Origin: Paragordius varius
Taxonomy: Eukaryota > Animalia > Nematomorpha
Assembly: GCA_964247055.1 (NCBI GenBank)
Contig: OZ176052.1
Span: 3,596,001-3,660,000, forward strand
DNA: 64,000 nt
Direction of reading: 5' to 3'
In this document: positions 29,654-37,087 of the stretch, in pieces
Layout: each line of letters opens with the position of its first letter
How positions within the stretch are numbered: position 1 is the first letter of the stretch
Notes under the pieces: generated by a model
Database searches by the model: none
What the model was told of the DNA's origin: nothing
What the model saw: the letters and a program-made list of their open reading frames with translations, nothing else
Made by a program: the position numbers and the translations under genes

Positions 29654-32600
29654 TTATAAAAAAGCTTCAAGCGTACAAATTTCATATAAAATTTCTTCTA
29701 TATTCATTCCACTAAGTTCTAAAATAATATTTAAAAATTTGTTGAGAATATATGAGTTTGCAATATTGTATTCTTGTAATCCCTCATCAGATTCATTGTT
29801 TTGAGCTTTGCTGTGATAGATTTTGTAACTTTTAACAAATTTATTAAAATGGGCCTTAAACGATTTGTGATATTTCGTATGTTTGTTAGGTGCATACATA
29901 CGATTAGATGGTATATTTAAACACTGATTAACATCACTTTTTAACGATTTATGGAGATCTAAAGTGTTATTGAACAAAGTTTCCATATCATCATTCCCAA
30001 AATGTTCATATATACGTTTATAGGTTGTCGCAATAATCATATTATATTGAGATAAATGGGTAAAAGATATCAACGTTGCATTTTGTAATGCATCAGAATT
30101 AAGATTAGAATTAATCGCGTTAGCATTATCGATGAATTGGGGCGTAAAGCCATGTTGTGATAGAAAAGGGGCCAGAGGGTCGTCTAAATCATCATAGTTT
30201 GAAGATTGCAAGAGCGTTTCATCATCTATGTGTAAAATTTGGTATTAACAATTATTTCTGTTTTACAATGTTAATGCTTAATAAAATTAATATTATTCTT
30301 TATATGATTATCAAATTCTTTTAATATCACTCCCATTTTAACGAAGTTGCATATTTTAATCATTAACAAAAAAATTAAACTGTTCAAATAGTCAAAAAAA
30401 CAAAATTTTTCCCCTGTTATGCATATGCGCTTACCTTGATTTTGACCACGATCATCGATAGGCGTTTTTGTTGAAGAGGTGGTAAATTCGGGTTTATATT
30501 GTTCAAAAAAATTTGCCAAATTATTTTTCAACAGTGTTTGTTTGACGGATGCAGAGCCAGTATCTGGTCGATATGCCCAAAATTGCATGGCATCTATGCA
30601 TTCATTAACACGTTGAGTCAGGGATTTTTTTGCATATTCTTGAGGATAAAACATCATAGCCAAATAATTTCGATAAATCTTATCATTAACACTTCCATGT
30701 TCATATTCAAGGGGATTAAGTAAAGCGTATTGTTTCAACAACTGTTTTTCATACCTTGCTTTGTATGATGAGTTAGATTGTGACAAAGATATCCACATAT
30801 TCCACCATAGGCTAAATTTAAAAACTGACGGTTTATTAATGTCTTCATTTGCTGTTGATACCTGGTCAGATACCTCGTCAGTATTAGATAAAACATGTGT
30901 GTTTTCATTAACATTAAAATGCGACTCAGTAGCTGAATGATAATAGTAAATGTGATAAATTTTAAAGGAAACAAAAAGTATGGCCCAAGCATGACCTTCC
31001 CAATTTATCCAATAACGTGAACCACGGAACATGTTATAAGGCGGATCTAAAATTCCAAACAACGGATTGTAAATAACATTGCTGGCTGATGGTAATTGGT
31101 CAGTTTGAGACGTAGTATTATTCGCCTTCTCATTTTCAAAACAATTGGCAAAGAGGTGTTGCAACATATCAAGATACGGTTGTTTGCAACATTTTTCGAT
31201 GATGAGTATGAGAGATTCTAAAACATACATTTATAAAATTTAAACCAAAAAAAGTCGTTTGAAAATCATTCAAGTGTATCAAGCAATTTTTTGAAACATA
31301 AGATTGATAATAGATGAAACGAGTATACTTGGTAAGTTCAATCGATGTGTCAAGAGATATACCATAGGCTGGATATACTTGTCAAATATTACTTTTCTAC
31401 ACATTAATGCTATTTCAATGTTAGAAGATTGATTCACATTACTATCCTTGTTTCCCCCAAAAGCATACTCGAAATATTGGGCATTTTTATCAAGTTCAAG
31501 CGTTTGGATTAGGTTTGCACATTGACGTCTTAGGCCTCGAATGAGTGGTAAGGTTCGTGTATTGAAAACGCAAGTATCAAACAGTACAAATTTCATTTCT
31601 TGTGGCAGAATGGAAAATGAATTACCCAAATAAGGGACAACACGTCGCGATATCAATCTATGAAAAAAAATAAAAAAACCAAGTAAAAAATTGAATAAAA
31701 ATCTCTTTCTAAAGTTTCCAAGATTTTAAAGCCTTAAAATTTTGAAAAATATGAATTAAATTGCAATTATAAAAAAATTTGATAGATTAACATAACATTG
31801 TTAAACATCATTTTATAGATATTTGGAAATTATTGTTAATAGAAAAACATGTACGAAATTATATCTGATATAAGGATCAAATATCTGTAGGATTCTTCCA
31901 CCAAGGATTGGTCAAAAACAGTTTCAGAAAAATTTATAAGAGTTGCACTAAGGCAGGTAAAACCAAGTGTTGAAAGTATTGATAAATCGTAGGCGTTCAA
32001 AACTCCTCTGTGTTTGAAATTTCTCGATTTAGTCAAAGGAAAAGGTCCACCGTTATTAGTTTGAGTAATAATTGGTTCGTTATCAAAATCTTGATCTAAA
32101 TTATCCTTTTCGCCCTCAAAATCTTGTGTGTTCTTATTATCACCAATTCCAGGTTGAGTATTAGATGCTCTAGTTTTACGGTACCTTAGAGGTATATTTT
32201 TGGTGAGATATTTATTAAGTATGGTTTGATTGGTAAGATTTGAATAATCAGAATTTTCGAGTTTTTCATCCAACTGTTCCCTGATTTGAGGGGTCAATAT
32301 ATCATTAAAATCGATTGATTTATCTTCTTCTTGCTGTTTTTTCGATGATGAATTATGTCTGGTGATCCTGGATATTTTAGAAATTTGAGTTGGAGTTTTC
32401 CTGGTTGAAATACGTACTTTTTGCAATTGCAGAGCACTGATGTTTGCAGCAATTCGTTGTTTTTTAGCGGGTGATGATATATCTAAAAAGGGTGATTAAA
32501 TCAAAAGCAAAAAATACATTTTTCATACAAAATATTTTAATTCATCGAATTAAAATGACTACCTTGAGGAGTATCATCCGTAACACGGGCCGGTCCTTCA

Positions 32601-33637
32601 AGGTCGATTAAATGTTTAAAACCCAGTTTTGAATCATTTTTAATATCGATATAATCATGTTTTTCAATAAAAACATTTTCTCCATATTCCTTATAGCCGC
32701 TGTTATTAAGTTCAAAAGATAAATTTACGGTTTCATCAACCAAAGTATCATGTTTGTTGAATAAGGCCTCAAATTGGTTTTCAAGCGAAAAAGTTTCTAT
32801 TTTTAATGATTTAGGATCCTCAAAATTGTTGGCTTGCTTAACCTTATGAACAGTATTTTTGATTTCACCGTCATCATAGGGAGACAAATCAATATTTTTA
32901 TCCATAACTTGGTTCAAGTTTGATTTGGCGTTCGGTTCTTTTTTTGTAAGTTCGTTTTCAGTTTTATTTAAAGAGCTGGCTGTATCGCGTTTAATGTAAT
33001 TAGTGTTTTTTATGTTAGTAACTGTTGATAACTTGGAAAGTATAGTTTTTATTTGGGGTTTGTCAGAAATTTGAACGCATTTAAATATGTCTCGGAGTCG
33101 TCTACTAAAAATTGGGTAATGCGATTGACCGTGAGGCGAAATAAAAATTGAGGATCCTGTAAAAAATAAAGATTCATAAATAATTTGTGAAAAAAATTGC
33201 TTAGTAATTATTTTTTGGTTAATTCAATAATATTTAATTACTATATCATCTATTTTCAAATTTCAACTATAATAAAAAACGCTTACGTTTTTGTAAAAAG
33301 TTATGGTAGAATTGAAGTGAATATGTCAATAAATCTTTGTTCACACCACATTTCAAAAGAGATTTTGATTGTTTTTTCAAGATGATTGCAAAAGCTTCTT
33401 GATATGTCCATGGCATCCCTTTATCCACTAAATTTATATATCAATCTTACAAAATAATGGAGCAATTTCGTTTAAATTAGATCTTTGAGAAAATTTTTGA
33501 CTGAAACCAGCGTTTATGGGTTCATCATCATCAACCTCATACATATCATATATTTGGACATTACATTGGGAACAAAAATATCGCCCATCCAAACAATCAT
33601 AATGAGTGGATTCGCATTGTTTGCATTTAAAAGACAT
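29654..33637 (-). CDS. TAF1B: RNA polymerase I initiation factor TAF1B/Rrn7-like, 7 exons, about 1077 aa
   Basis: Exons (-): 33637-33451, 33427-33287, 33156-32563, 32482-31855, 31657-31329, 31217-30435, 30225-29654; phases are consistent. Zinc ribbon CKQC...DGRYFCSQC; KGMPWTYQEAFAIILKKQSKSLLKCGV resembles human [44 protein letters not shown] resembles ITLSDLLRFVEEDHIPY, and the RLNLP motif and C-terminal helix resemble the human C-terminus. Human sequence is recalled from memory. The first intron and the exon 5/6 junction are the least certain. Confidence 0.85.
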
Positions 33638-33644
33638 TGTATGA

Positions 33645-33812
33645 TTAGGTATTTTTGAATCCCAGGTTTTCAAATTTTTCAGTTGCCATTAAGTTATTAT
33701 CCATTCGGCATTTCAAATATTTTTGGGATTCAGTTAAGCATTTTGACGAATTATTATCATTTTTACTGAGACAAAACATATATTTTAAAACAAATTCTCT
33801 ACAAATCTTTTC
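33645..33812 (-). CDS. COX19: COX19 C-terminal part (twin CX9C), 55 aa, with no local ATG for the N-terminus
   Basis: EKICREFVLKYMFCLSKNDNNSSKCLTESQKYLKCRMDNNLMATEKFENLGFKNT* shows CX9C-X10-CX9C spacing and the YLxCRM..NLM...E.LGF signature of COX19. Confidence 0.85.
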   Translation of the reverse strand, partial: EKICREFVLKYMFCLSKNDNNSSKCLTESQKYLKCRMDNNLMATEKFENLGFKNT

Positions 33813-33819
33813 ATCAAGG

Positions 33820-33960
33820 TGTATCAAGAAAAGGGTGTAGCAGACCCACGTCGCCACTGTCCACAAAAGACGTCCCTTGCTGCCCTTCCAAACACCAGTC
33901 AATGGTGGTTCAGTGACAGCCGTCTAGTTGCGTCAGGGGTCGAGTTGACTTCTAGGGATA
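33820..33960. ncRNA. Candidate structured RNA element (unassigned)
   Basis: About 55% GC, with a long imperfect hairpin AAGGG..AGCA..ACGUC/GACGU..UGCU..CCCUU and a short CACCA/UGGUG hairpin. Confidence 0.2.
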
Positions 33961-34478
33961 TAATGATAAGTTTATATAAAGATATGTATGAAATAAAATG
34001 AAGATATATTTGACATTTACTGGTAAAATAAATCCAATCGACTATGTCCTATATATTTATACTAATGTTTAATAGATCTAATATTCTTTAAGCTTAATTC
34101 AATCGAATGCATATTTTCATACTGTAACAGTATTTATCTTGTTTGATACGATTTTATAAACCAATATTTAACTTTTGCTAGTGTGTATTTCCGTTTTTAG
34201 TCCATGTTTTTTTATAGTCTATAAATTCCAGTTGGTATTCATAAAGTGTCTGATATTTAAATCAATTTTTCTCCTTTTATATGTAAATCTAACATTTATA
34301 GACCAATAAATTAAATTTTCTTTAATCAATCTCTTAATTAAAACAATTTTTTCCCTTTGTAAAGTCCTCTTAAGATACCGCATTCGTTATCTTTAATCTA
34401 TAAATTCCAGTTGTTATTTGCCTTTATAATACATTTAAAATACCGCATTATAAATCTTTTTAATTTTTACAAGCAAAT

Positions 34479-34628
34479 TAACAGTAGCAAATGGTTAAGA
34501 TTTAACATATTTTTTAATGACTTTTTTTATATAAATAATAAATGTGTAAAATCTAACAGTAGCAAATGGTTAAAATGTAACAAACTTTTTAGTGACTATT
34601 TTAAAAATAATAAATATGTAAAATCTAA
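34479..34628. repeat. Tandem duplication, two copies of a 75-bp unit
   Basis: TAACAGTAGCAAATGGTTAA recurs at 34479 and 34554, with similar downstream sequence. Confidence 0.8.
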
Positions 34629-34669
34629 AGGACATTTAAAATAAAGTAAAATATAAAAATGCTTATCTC

Positions 34670-34985
34670 TAAGTTACGCATGGAAGTTCCAAAGGGACTA
34701 CGTTCAGCTTGGTCGTAGCAACGAAACGTAAACTTTCCCGTGCCTGTGTCAATCTTTCCTCCTATGCGACTACAGCGGCACGCCCCACAGCGCTCCTATT
34801 ATTATGCTAAAAAGCAAAGGCATACAAATGGGGAGCCTAAGTGAGTGCATATAGAGTGACACCTTAGACGAAGCGGTACACATCCCGCTAAGCTATAGAC
34901 TATCCGGGAAAGATCGTTACAATCAACGTCATGCGGTCGTCCAACCAATACTGGCATGCAATACATTCCCTTGCGTGTTTGTTGA
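34670..34985. ncRNA. Candidate structured RNA or TE-derived GC-rich island (unassigned)
   Basis: About 50% GC over some 310 nt against a strongly AT-rich background, with several hairpins and no convincing ORF. Confidence 0.25.
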
Positions 34986-35832
34986 GAATATTTATTTTTA
35001 GTCATAATATTACCATTATTATAAAGTTCTCATTTTAGGCAAAGAATTACAATGACAATGTTCGTAAGTCCCAATAAAAACATAATTTTCATTCAATAAG
35101 CGTTCTTGTAGATAAGGTGCAATTAGGATTATCATATCTTATAAATAGTGCATGAAGTTTTAAGTATAGAAGCCAAAAACTCGTTTTCCAATTTTCAGCG
35201 AATAAAAGTATATAGTCTGGTTGTGATTCATAAATCCAAAAGTAACCGAATAAAATATCCAGGCGAAGAAGACAATTCCTAACTTCAGCAGTGGTGTAGT
35301 AACAACGTACAAATTGTTCTCCTATTTGCTTAACCTGTTCGTGATCGGATGCCGCATTAGTGTCTATTTAGGTAGGGAAATATTTAAAAATATCATATGA
35401 AATAAAGAATATATTATCGATCTAAGTAGGTCCTGAGATGTGAAGTTCGGATTTGTCTTGGCATATTGAGTAATATTATATAAACCATTTGTGGATAACA
35501 ATCAAATGTCATTTTTTTGGGAATTATCCATTGCCTGGCTTATTTTAAAAACTCATGTTTAAATTAAACATATCTGTATCATTCCATTTGTTGAGAGGTG
35601 ACACAGGATAATTGAATAAAATGCATATTTTATATAAAATATCTAGGTTCATAGAAGTTTTATGATGGTGTCAATTTTTGCAATTCAATTTTTTATTGTG
35701 TTGTTGTCATATTGAGATAGGTGAGAAGCTGCTTAAGGACTATATAGACTTTGAAGGAGACAAAATTCTTGCAAAATTTATATGTTTTTGATTTTATGTT
35801 TGGCTAATGCGGTCGATGATACACATATGTCG

Positions 35833-35901
35833 ATGATCCAATAAAAAACTCCCTTTGTCAGGAGGCGTGGGAGCCGGTGCTTTGGGATTAAACACACTCA
35901 T
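35833..35901 (-). pseudogene. COX19: COX19 N-terminal part (orphan exon or gene fragment), 23 aa
   Basis: MSVFNPKAPAPTPPDKGSFLLDH matches the COX19 PPDKGSFPLDH signature. The frame continues RHMCIIDRISQT* without further homology. Confidence 0.75.
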
Positions 35902-37087
35902 TACACATATGATTGATGTTTCAGAACAATCTGATGTAAAGACGGCATATCGGGGCAAAAAAATCCCATCCCTAAAATTTGTAATCGATATTACCGAAAA
36001 TTTGACTGATTATTAAATTCTTAACCTATATAAAAAATTACGCTGAAGTAATTTTTCGGAAAAGGTCTAGGCTTAAGTGGTTATTTTTTTAGAATATAAA
36101 TATAATTTAGCCGTATGAAACCCCTTCCACTGTAAAAATTAAATTATTGTATATTGCATTTTAAGTTTAAATGACGCTTCAAAAAAAATCGGAGGTCCAT
36201 TCAGTCTGAATTTTTAACATAAGCACATATGATGACTAATAAATAGACCTTGGCCCGTACCCATCGTCCCGAATGATAGAAGGCCTTCCATTATTGGCTT
36301 TAAAGTAATTTTTGGAAAAACGCGCTTATTTGAATTTTATAATGGACTTTTGGATCTTTACGAATGCACCGAAGATTACAAAGCCATTTTTCATTCGTCC
36401 CTTAGTGCTGGTCCATACTTGTAAAATGGGGTTTAATTAAATATTAGTTTTCAACCGAGTTTGCGGAAAGCATATATTTTAATTCTTTTTCAATAATAGA
36501 TTTTTTAATAATAATACGCCCTAGGGTGAAGAAAAATTCTATCAACACCACGTTAATAAAATAATTGTATTTTTAAGCAAAATATTTTGTAATATAAGTT
36601 ATATTTAAATTCGAGGGTAATGCTCCAGGGGTCAGTAGGCATGTTTTTAAATTTTTCTTGATTTGGGACCCTACCTCTTGGAAAGGTATTTAACTGATCT
36701 CTTTTGAGCTGTTTTACGAAAAACAAAAGCCAACCATTGTTTTTTAATAATAAATTGTTTATCTGCTACGTAGGCGCGAGTGAGATATTTCAGAATTATC
36801 TCAGAGTAACCAAAATAAATGGGTTTTTAACTATAAAACATGGGCTTTGATCCAGAAAACGCTTAATCTTAAATAAAGAAAAACTCAATTTTGGTCCGCG
36901 ATAACGTATTTTAATGCTCTTGTATTAGATAAAAAAAAGTTTATATTTTTTACAGTTATATAACTATTTAAATTTTAGAAATGACCAAAACAACTTGGCA
37001 GCCGATTTGAATTCTAATGATTACATGTTTTTGATGGTAAAATTAACTGAAAACTTAATAAAATTTCTAAATTTTGCCATGTTTTAA

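What the first reader, a model, noticed from the sequence alone, without database searches (positions are those of the whole stretch)
33635..33647. COX19 stop codon only 7 nt upstream of the TAF1B start: candidate bicistronic locus
Seen (- strand): ...AAT ACC TAA TCATACA ATG TCT TTT, leaving no room for a polyA signal, promoter or separate 5'UTR between the two frames. Known: conserved bicistronic mRNAs with a small upstream ORF exist in animals (for example SNURF-SNRPN and MIEF1 with its upstream microprotein) and are translated by leaky scanning or reinitiation. Inference: one mRNA may couple a mitochondrial complex IV assembly factor to Pol I initiation. Alternatively, a COX19 relic forms the TAF1B 5'UTR or promoter.
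Basis: partly seen in the sequence, partly recalled or inferred. Interest (0 to 1): 0.7.

Follow-up and report, generated by a model that had tools for sequence, protein, structure and literature searches.

The report
COX19 abutting TAF1B, split by insertion
In this horsehair-worm-type genome the small mitochondrial gene COX19 really does stop seven bases before the start of the RNA polymerase I factor gene TAF1B, so the two must share transcribed sequence and probably one messenger RNA. In the assembled copy COX19 is also broken by a 2 kb repeat insertion that other copies in the population lack.

Summary
On the minus strand, COX19 ends TAA at 33647-33645, a 7-nt spacer follows, and the ATG at 33637 opens the zinc-ribbon exon of TAF1B.

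There is a new result. The "2 kb intron without a splice solution" in COX19 is a polymorphic 2,020-bp insertion of a high-copy repeat (33813-35832). DNA contigs from three runs join 33812 directly to 35833 at single-copy depth. That join gives an uninterrupted 78-codon COX19 that aligns with named COX19 homologues without a gap. The reference haplotype therefore carries a broken COX19.

Three features mean the two genes must overlap transcriptionally:
- TAF1B has no AG acceptor within 130 nt upstream of its ATG.
- Its frame is closed 18 codons upstream of the ATG.
- No AATAAA or ATTAAA follows the COX19 stop for 407 nt.

A bicistronic mRNA is the best reading (about 0.5), but no RNA run could be reached. 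Seven AUGs lie between the two starts, which favours termination-coupled reinitiation over leaky scanning.

There is a precedent. Six other taxa have a flavoprotein (PPCDC-type) gene downstream of COX19 on the same strand, with spacers from -4 to 110 nt in five and about 1.5 kb in one. A twin-CX9C upstream ORF is published for the Drosophila flavoprotein gene CG30290.

Earlier notes of this scan list at least six similar stop-start pairs elsewhere in this genome.

Verdict: a new member of a known kind, with moderate interest.

The parts
35833..35901 (-). COX19 codons 1-23 (MSVF...PPDKGSFLLDH)
   Evidence: Translation. It aligns with the N-termini of COX19 homologues. In the assembled haplotype the frame runs on into the insert and stops after 35 residues.
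33813..35832 (.). 2,020-bp polymorphic insertion of a high-copy, non-autonomous repeat inside the COX19 coding sequence
   Evidence: One search gives three lines of evidence. A joint 33812->35833 is seen in contigs of X1, X4 and X5 at single-copy depth, with 2 ambiguous letters (AT). Depth is up to about 200 times single copy at the 33813 end and falls to about single copy at the 35832 end. Nine to twelve contigs per run have unlike flanks that end exactly at 33813. There are no terminal inverted repeats, no second copy in the window, and no Rfam, tRNA or Pfam match.
33645..33812 (-). COX19 codons 24-78 plus the TAA stop (twin Cx9C domain)
   Evidence: Translation; Pfam CHCH E=0.002, below cut-off; Atlas COX19 cluster 0.92; HMMER best E=2e-10 with named COX19 members.
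33660..33664 (-). UGGGA at the conserved Leu-Gly codons (CTG GGA), 27 nt upstream of the TAF1B AUG. Weak lead for a termination-reinitiation motif.
   Evidence: Sequence. The same pentamer sits at the same codons in 3 of 3 COX19 pairs with a spacer of 7 nt or less, and in 2 of 10 other COX19 loci. The region is not more structured than shuffles (z +0.51).
33638..33644 (-). 7-nt spacer TCATACA between the COX19 stop and the TAF1B start
33451..33637 (-). TAF1B exon 1 (start codon and CxxC...CxxC zinc ribbon)
   Evidence: Pfam PF11781 Zn_ribbon_RRN7 E=3.1e-4. The single-sequence AF2 model is a beta ribbon with pLDDT 72-83 over residues 1-30. Foldseek gives only non-significant zinc-ribbon hits. 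A at -3 of the ATG.
33428..33450 (-). 23-nt GT-AG intron 1 of TAF1B
   Evidence: It is needed to keep the frame from exon 1 into exon 2. Not confirmed by RNA.
33287..33427 (-). TAF1B exon 2
   Evidence: Frame-consistent model.
32563..33156 (-). TAF1B exon 3. It holds the first AATAAA after the COX19 stop, at 33053.
31855..32482 (-). TAF1B exon 4
31329..31657 (-). TAF1B exon 5
30435..31217 (-). TAF1B exon 6
   Evidence: The 125-bp deletion seen in sample S3 (30295-30419) falls in the intron that follows, which fits the model.
29654..30225 (-). TAF1B exon 7 with its stop
   Evidence: ORF; the model has no internal stop.
33233..33238 (-). First ATTAAA after the COX19 stop (407 nt downstream, in TAF1B intron 2). 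A possible short-form 3' end for COX19 mRNA.

Best explanation
COX19 in this species is a one-exon gene of 78 codons. Its stop codon lies 7 nt before the start codon of TAF1B on the same strand.

TAF1B has no usable splice or trans-splice acceptor upstream and no upstream start, so its 5' leader must be COX19 coding sequence. The COX19 stop is followed by TAF1B exon 1 with no poly(A) hexamer for about 400 nt, so the COX19 mRNA must run into TAF1B.

The most likely arrangement (inferred) is one capped mRNA, made from the promoter upstream of 35901, that carries both ORFs. Ribosomes translate COX19, terminate at 33645, and a fraction of 40S subunits resume at the AUG 7 nt further on (termination-coupled reinitiation). 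Leaky scanning would contribute little, because seven AUGs intervene.

Shown here: the assembled haplotype is an insertion allele. A 2,020-bp high-copy repeat cuts COX19 after codon 23. The uninterrupted allele is present in DNA from three runs of two samples. In run X1 the contigs break exactly where the two forms diverge and converge, which suggests a heterozygote.
For: - Stop, 7 nt, ATG are read directly.
- The nearest AG upstream of the TAF1B ATG is at 33767. The TAF1B frame is closed 18 codons upstream and has no other ATG.
- There is no AATAAA or ATTAAA between 33900 and 33239.
- The insertion-free joint is seen at single-copy depth in X1, X4 and X5. The joined ORF aligns with COX19 homologues without a gap (LDH|EKIC against LDHEGxC).
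- COX19 sits upstream of a same-strand PF02441 flavoprotein gene in six other taxa. Spacers are -4, 5, 55, 88 and 110 nt in five of them and about 1.5 kb in the sixth.
- One of those contigs (L003) begins with what I recall as a SMART-type cDNA adaptor tail and ends just after AATAAA, so it looks like a bicistronic cDNA.
- A 94-aa twin-CX9C conserved upstream ORF is published for the Drosophila flavoprotein gene CG30290 (PMC2276209).
- L003 and L008 also show no depletion of AUGs in the COX19 cistron.
- Earlier notes of this scan, which I did not check, list further small-gene/next-gene pairs with spacers of 1-10 nt in this genome. The genome itself is not compact: introns and intergenic regions run to kilobases.
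Against: - There is no RNA evidence at all. No listed holder is on record as RNA, and the runs that were laid behave as DNA: introns are covered and there are no splice joints.
- By established knowledge, a 78-codon upstream ORF is long for efficient reinitiation.
- The COX19 AUG has G at -3, and 7 AUGs (4.6 expected) precede the TAF1B AUG.
- A 50-nt AUG-free stretch just upstream of the TAF1B AUG would also suit a short leader from an internal start site.
- The 121 nt around the junction are no more structured than shuffles.
- No relative of this species could be found to test conservation of the pairing.
Confidence: 0.5

Rival explanations
1. Two overlapping but separate mRNAs. TAF1B is transcribed from an internal start site within the last part of the COX19 coding sequence, for instance in the AUG-free 50 nt before 33637. 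COX19 mRNA ends by polyadenylation inside TAF1B, for instance at the ATTAAA in intron 2. TAF1B protein then comes from its own monocistronic mRNA.
For: - This is the default rule for animal genes.
- An AUG-free leader of up to 50 nt is available.
- ATTAAA at 33238 in TAF1B intron 2 could end a short COX19 mRNA.
- The seven AUGs and the good context of the COX19 AUG make translation of TAF1B from a bicistronic mRNA inefficient.
- The insertion haplotype keeps 175 nt of native sequence upstream of the TAF1B ATG.
Against: - It does not explain why stop and start abut within 7 nt in a genome with kilobase-sized spacers. Nor does it explain why the same abutment recurs for other small genes here (unchecked notes) or for COX19 with another partner elsewhere.
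- Even under this model the COX19 transcript must contain at least TAF1B exons 1-2.
Confidence: 0.35
2. COX19 at this locus is a dead relic that only serves as the leader or promoter of TAF1B.
For: In the assembled haplotype COX19 is cut after codon 23. From its ATG it reads only 35 residues, and no in-frame canonical splice removes the insert (my reading).
Against: The insertion-free allele is present at single-copy depth in three runs from two samples. It encodes a full, gap-free COX19 with both Cx9C pairs. The insert is a high-copy repeat with exact ends, so it is a recent polymorphism.
Confidence: 0.05
3. A nematode-type operon. A polycistronic precursor is resolved by spliced-leader trans-splicing just upstream of the TAF1B ATG.
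For: Nematomorpha are the sister phylum of nematodes, which use such operons (established knowledge).
Against: There is no AG between 33767 and the ATG at 33637. An acceptor at 33767 would leave five upstream AUGs in the leader. The spacer is 7 nt, not about 100 nt. The paper library holds nothing on spliced leaders in Nematomorpha.
Confidence: 0.03
4. A single fusion protein made by a +1 frameshift or another recoding event near the end of COX19. TAF1B is in the +1 frame, which is open for 18 codons before its ATG.
For: Only the frame geometry.
Against: There is no slippery or recoding signal. The TAF1B zinc ribbon starts 4 residues after its own ATG, as expected of a native N-terminus.
Confidence: 0.01

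Closest known systems
COX19-type twin-CX9C upstream cistron of the flavoprotein/PPCDC gene (Drosophila CG30290 conserved-peptide uORF, PMC2276209; COX19-flavoprotein pairs in loci L002, L003, L004-L006, L008, L011, L013)
   Same: The same small mitochondrial protein family is the 5' partner, on the same strand. The spacer goes down to -4 and 5 nt. AUGs are not depleted in the upstream ORF.
   Different: The downstream partner here is TAF1B, not the flavoprotein. EST or cDNA support exists there and none here. That the Drosophila uORF is COX19 itself is my inference from the paper's words 'twin CX9C' and 'flavoprotein' plus the loci fetched here.
Green-algal polycistronic loci (PMC7896298; PMC11291117)
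   Same: A small conserved upstream ORF, a very short inter-ORF distance and independent translation of both products.
   Different: There the evidence favours leaky scanning tuned by a weak start context. Here the start has a purine at -3 and seven AUGs intervene.
Viral termination-reinitiation (calicivirus and influenza B TURBS; from established knowledge)
   Same: A long upstream ORF, stop and restart codon within a few nt, and a UGGGA pentamer 27 nt upstream of the restart AUG.
   Different: This is a cellular gene, no stable presenting structure is predicted, and the pentamer also encodes the conserved Leu-Gly. Function is untested.
Nematode SL2/SL1 operons
   Same: Tightly linked same-strand genes in the sister phylum.
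   Different: Such operons need an AG acceptor and usually a spacer of about 100 nt. Neither is present here.
   Same: A small upstream protein-coding ORF on the mRNA of a larger protein. p8MTCP1 is also a twin-CX9C mitochondrial protein.
   Different: The gene pairs are different, and the spacing is not stop-to-start in most of them (from memory).

Membership tests
Eukaryotic bicistronic mRNA (two conserved ORFs translated from one mature mRNA) | Two independent conserved ORFs, same strand, short inter-ORF distance, different frames | tested here: met
   COX19 and TAF1B, 7 nt apart, TAF1B in the +1 frame.
Eukaryotic bicistronic mRNA (two conserved ORFs translated from one mature mRNA) | One mature transcript contains both complete ORFs | not testable with these tools
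   No RNA run holds the stretch.
Eukaryotic bicistronic mRNA (two conserved ORFs translated from one mature mRNA) | No poly(A) signal or acceptor site between the ORFs | tested here: met
   No AATAAA or ATTAAA from 33900 to 33239; no AG from 33766 to 33638. An internal promoter cannot be excluded from sequence alone.
Eukaryotic bicistronic mRNA (two conserved ORFs translated from one mature mRNA) | Both products translated | not testable with these tools
   Needs Ribo-seq or proteomics.
Leaky-scanning type of bicistron (green-algal model) | Weak start context and few AUGs in the upstream cistron | tested here: not met
   G at -3; 7 AUGs between the starts against 4.6 expected.
SL trans-spliced operon | AG acceptor just upstream of the downstream ORF | tested here: not met
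   The nearest AG is 130 nt upstream, with 5 AUGs behind it.
COX19 (twin Cx9C assembly factor) | Two Cx9C pairs, the N-terminal PPDKGSFPLDH-type motif and homology to named COX19 proteins | tested here: met
   C-x9-C twice. The motif is in the 5' part. Atlas COX19 cluster 0.92. HMMER best E=2e-10 with members named COX19. The alignment is gap-free. Pfam CHCH is only E=0.002, below cut-off.
TAF1B / Rrn7 (Pol I TFIIB-like factor) | N-terminal zinc ribbon of the Rrn7 type | tested here: inconclusive
   PF11781 is the only hit: E=3.1e-4, 20.7 bits against a cut-off of 27.1. The fold model is a beta ribbon, but Foldseek matches are not significant.
TAF1B / Rrn7 (Pol I TFIIB-like factor) | Two cyclin-like domains behind the ribbon | tested here: inconclusive
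   Searched exon by exon: no Pfam hit, no PDB hit, no Atlas hit, and the exon 6 model is too poor (pLDDT 43). The spliced protein was not searched as a whole. Resemblance of exons 2, 5 and 7 to human TAF1B is from my memory only.
TURBS-type termination-reinitiation | UGGGA (complementary to 18S helix 26) presented by a stem upstream of a stop/start site | tested here: inconclusive
   UGGGA is at 33664-33660, flanked by a possible 6-bp A/U stem. That stem is not in the minimum-energy fold, and the z-score is +0.51. The comparative trend is 3/3 against 2/10, about p=0.035, post hoc.

The most novel reading that the evidence does not exclude
COX19 may be a portable 'upstream cistron' that brings its own reinitiation signal. 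The UGGGA pentamer sits in the codons of its conserved C-terminal Leu-Gly motif, 27-46 nt before the restart AUG in the tightly packed pairs. It would tether the terminating 40S subunit, as in viral TURBS elements, so that whatever gene sits a few bases behind the stop is translated: PPCDC in several lineages, TAF1B in horsehair worms. With the other pairs noted in this genome (NDUFAF8-UTP6, APC16-RCL1, COX17-DPH3), this would mean a spliced-leader-independent bicistronic system. That system would tie small mitochondrial proteins to nucleolar and ribosome-biogenesis genes in the sister phylum of nematodes.
Probability: 0.08. Interest if true: 0.8.

Novelty: new member of a known kind. Interest (0 to 1): 0.5.

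Why it matters
If one mRNA makes both proteins, a horsehair worm would couple a cytochrome oxidase assembly factor to the factor that recruits RNA polymerase I, in a phylum where no polycistronic expression has been described. The paper library gave nothing on this.

The locus would also show that COX19, already an upstream cistron of PPCDC in other animals, can change its downstream partner.

The insertion allele is a ready-made natural experiment. It separates the COX19 promoter from TAF1B by 2 kb, so allele-specific TAF1B expression in heterozygotes can tell a shared promoter from an internal one without any transgenics.

It also warns annotators that the reference haplotype carries a null COX19 allele, not an odd intron.

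Tried and rejected
- **RNA evidence.** The run search found no RNA holder. The four runs laid are DNA: introns are covered, there are no GT-AG joints, and only intronic indels appear.
- **Relatives, for synteny.** The word search was blank for the COX19 3' part, TAF1B exon 6 and TAF1B exon 1. The HMMER search found only relatives at 62% identity or less (the top dozen at about 50%), none with TAF1B downstream.
- **A splice solution for the 2 kb gap.** No in-frame canonical GT-AG pair restores the family alignment; the one frame-keeping pair would add about 18 foreign residues. I rejected this in favour of the insertion allele.
- **Class of the insert.** It has no inverted terminal repeats, no tRNA, no Rfam match and no Pfam match. 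Copy number rises toward the 33813 end and there are 2 nt of microhomology. This suggests a 5'-truncated retroposon-like or Helitron-like element, but the class stays open.
- **Structure at the junction.** None beyond chance.
- **Independent proof of TAF1B identity beyond the zinc ribbon.** PDB, Atlas, Pfam by exon, and folds gave nothing usable.
- **Other tight gene pairs in this window.** None found.
- **Joined sequences.** The joined COX19 (across the insert) and the spliced TAF1B have no reference. They were built only inside local scripts, for frame checks and one local alignment.

Full report
**What is in the sequence**

On the minus strand, reads ...AAT ACC TAA, then TCATACA, then ATG TCT TTT. 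The stop is at 33647-33645, the spacer at 33644-33638 and the ATG at 33637-33635. The window has about 25% G+C. Earlier notes of this scan call the genome horsehair-worm-type.

**The upstream gene is COX19**

- The 55 codons before the stop carry two Cx9C pairs.
- Pfam gives CHCH only below its cut-off (E=0.002).
- The nearest Atlas cluster is "cytochrome c oxidase assembly protein COX19" (0.92, 199 shared features).
- The exhaustive HMMER search found 259 relatives at E<=1e-3, best 2e-10. Named members are COX19 of Haliotis and a JGI "assembly protein subunit 19".
- The N-terminal 23 codons, with the family's PPDKGSF.LDH motif, lie 2 kb upstream at 35901-35833.

**The 2 kb gap is an insertion, not an intron**

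Laying contigs of four public runs on 30200-36100 explains it.

- Contigs of X1, X4 and X5 (two samples, one study) join 33812 directly to 35833. They skip 2,020 bp, at the depth of single-copy flanks, with two ambiguous letters (AT) and ends that are not GT-AG.
- The skipped stretch has a summed depth of up to about 200 times single copy at the 33813 end, falling to about single copy at the 35832 end.
- In every run, 6 to 12 contigs with unlike flanks stop exactly at 33813.
- The runs behave as DNA: all TAF1B introns are covered and no intron is skipped. The joint is therefore a DNA allele.

Joined in a local script only, the empty allele gives an uninterrupted 78-codon ORF. It aligns with ten COX19 homologues without any gap at the joint (LDH|EKIC against LDHEGxC). 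The assembled haplotype instead reads 35 residues from the same ATG and stops.

In X1 one contig ends at 33814, where the two forms diverge. The empty-site contig ends about 27 nt past the joint, where they converge. This is what a mixture of both alleles would give, so the sequenced animal is probably heterozygous. That last step is an inference.

The insert has no terminal inverted repeats, no other copy in the window, and no tRNA, Rfam or Pfam match. Its class is open.

**The downstream gene**

- Exon 1 (33637-33451) has Zn_ribbon_RRN7 as its only Pfam hit (E=3.1e-4, residues 2-29, below cut-off).
- A single-sequence model is a beta ribbon. Its Foldseek matches are zinc ribbons, including TFIIB-family chains, but none is significant.
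- I built a 7-exon model: 33637-33451, 33427-33287, 33156-32563, 32482-31855, 31657-31329, 31217-30435 and 30225-29654. All six introns are GT-AG, the first is 23 nt long, and the model has 1,077 codons with no internal stop.
- Indels seen in sample S3 fall in introns 2 and 6, which fits the model.
- The later exons gave no Pfam, PDB or Atlas match when searched one by one. Their likeness to human TAF1B is from my memory only.
- The spliced protein was not searched as a whole, because it has no reference.

**Why the two genes must overlap transcriptionally**

- Between 33766 and the ATG there is no AG, so no cis- or trans-splice acceptor.
- An acceptor at 33767 would leave five AUGs in the leader.
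- The TAF1B frame is closed 18 codons upstream and holds no other ATG.
- After the COX19 stop, the first ATTAAA is 407 nt away, in TAF1B intron 2. The first AATAAA is 592 nt away, in exon 3.

The TAF1B leader is therefore COX19 coding sequence, and the COX19 3' UTR is TAF1B sequence. This much follows from the sequence.

**How it most likely works**

No RNA run holds the stretch, so the rest is inference.

For one bicistronic mRNA:
- The abutment occurs in a genome that is otherwise not compact.
- Unchecked notes of this scan list NDUFAF8-UTP6 (3 nt), APC16-RCL1 (2 nt), COX17-DPH3 (1 nt), NAA38-TAF11 (9 nt), PTRHD1-TMX2 (10 nt) and SMIM12-TRNT1 (overlap) elsewhere in the same genome.
- COX19 has a precedent of its own. 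I looked up 14 COX19 homologues in their contigs. Six taxa have a PF02441 flavoprotein (PPCDC-type) gene behind COX19 on the same strand:

| Locus | Spacer |
|---|---|
| L004-L006 | -4 nt |
| L008 | 5 nt |
| L003 | 55 nt |
| L011 | 88 nt |
| L002 | 110 nt |
| L013 | about 1.5 kb |

- L003 begins with what I recall as a SMART-type cDNA adaptor tail and ends after AATAAA, so it looks like a bicistronic cDNA.
- Hayden and Bosco (PMC2276209) list a 94-aa conserved upstream ORF with twin CX9C motifs on the transcript of the Drosophila flavoprotein gene CG30290, conserved to crustacean ESTs.

On the mechanism:
- The COX19 AUG has G at -3.
- Seven AUGs (4.6 expected) precede the TAF1B AUG. L003 and L008 show the same lack of depletion.
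- This argues against leaky scanning, the mechanism favoured for green algae (PMC7896298). It points to reinitiation after termination, which the 7-nt spacing suits.
- A 78-codon first ORF is long for that (established knowledge), so efficiency may be low. That could suit a factor needed in small amounts.

The main rival is an internal TAF1B start site in the AUG-free 50 nt before the ATG, with COX19 mRNA ending in TAF1B intron 2. I put the shared mRNA at about 0.5 and this rival at about 0.35.

**A weak lead**

UGGGA, the pentamer that viral TURBS elements use to hold the 40S subunit (from established knowledge), sits at 33664-33660. It lies in the codons of the conserved Leu-Gly, 27 nt before the TAF1B AUG.

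- The same pentamer at the same codons occurs in all three COX19 pairs with a spacer of 7 nt or less (this window, L008, L004).
- It occurs in 2 of 10 other COX19 loci.
- That is about p=0.035, post hoc, and confounded by codon usage.
- The region is not structured beyond chance (z +0.51).

I record it as a hypothesis only.

**Unexplained**

In X3 (another organism label, depth about 5), one contig joins 35834 to 33611. That join would fuse COX19 codons 1-22 in frame to TAF1B from codon 10 and delete the CHCH domain and the first zinc-ribbon cysteines. It could be a real deletion allele or a chimeric contig.

**Verdict**

The bicistronic reading is plausible and now has a family-specific precedent, but it remains untested for lack of RNA. 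The kind is known (bicistronic mRNAs with a twin-CX9C upstream cistron). The partner (TAF1B), the phylum and the insertion allele are new.

Noticed in passing
L002, L003, L004-L006, L008, L011, L013 (fetched loci): In six unrelated taxa COX19 is followed on the same strand by a PF02441 flavoprotein (PPCDC-type) gene. Spacers are -4, 5, 55, 88 and 110 nt and about 1.5 kb. L003 looks like a full bicistronic cDNA. This matches the CX9C upstream ORF published for Drosophila CG30290.
   Followed up: partly
window 33611 / 35834 (run X3): One low-depth contig of a differently labelled organism joins 35834 to 33611. This would be an in-frame fusion of COX19 codons 1-22 to TAF1B codon 10 onward. It may be a real deletion allele or a chimeric contig.
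   Followed up: no
window 33428-33450: A 23-nt GT-AG intron is required to keep the TAF1B frame between exons 1 and 2.
   Followed up: partly
window 30295-30419 and 33161-33270: Sample S3 (about 4-5% diverged from the window) carries a 125-bp deletion in TAF1B intron 6 and indels or replacements of 74-82 bp in intron 2. All lie within modelled introns.
   Followed up: partly
window 34479-34628: Inside the insert there are two tandem copies of about 75 nt (83-86% alike). At 34680-34990 there is a G+C-rich patch with no Rfam match.
   Followed up: partly
window 35417 (runs X1, X4, X5): Several contigs leave the window sequence at 35417 with one shared continuation (agreement 0.97). The repeat family's usual sequence therefore differs from this copy beyond that point, and the insert is composite or rearranged at its low-copy end.
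   Followed up: no
window 35908-35888: An ATG 7 nt upstream of the COX19 ATG opens a 6-codon overlapping upstream ORF (ATG TGT AAT GAG TGT GTT TAA). Either the COX19 leader is very short or COX19 itself sits behind a mini-uORF.
   Followed up: no
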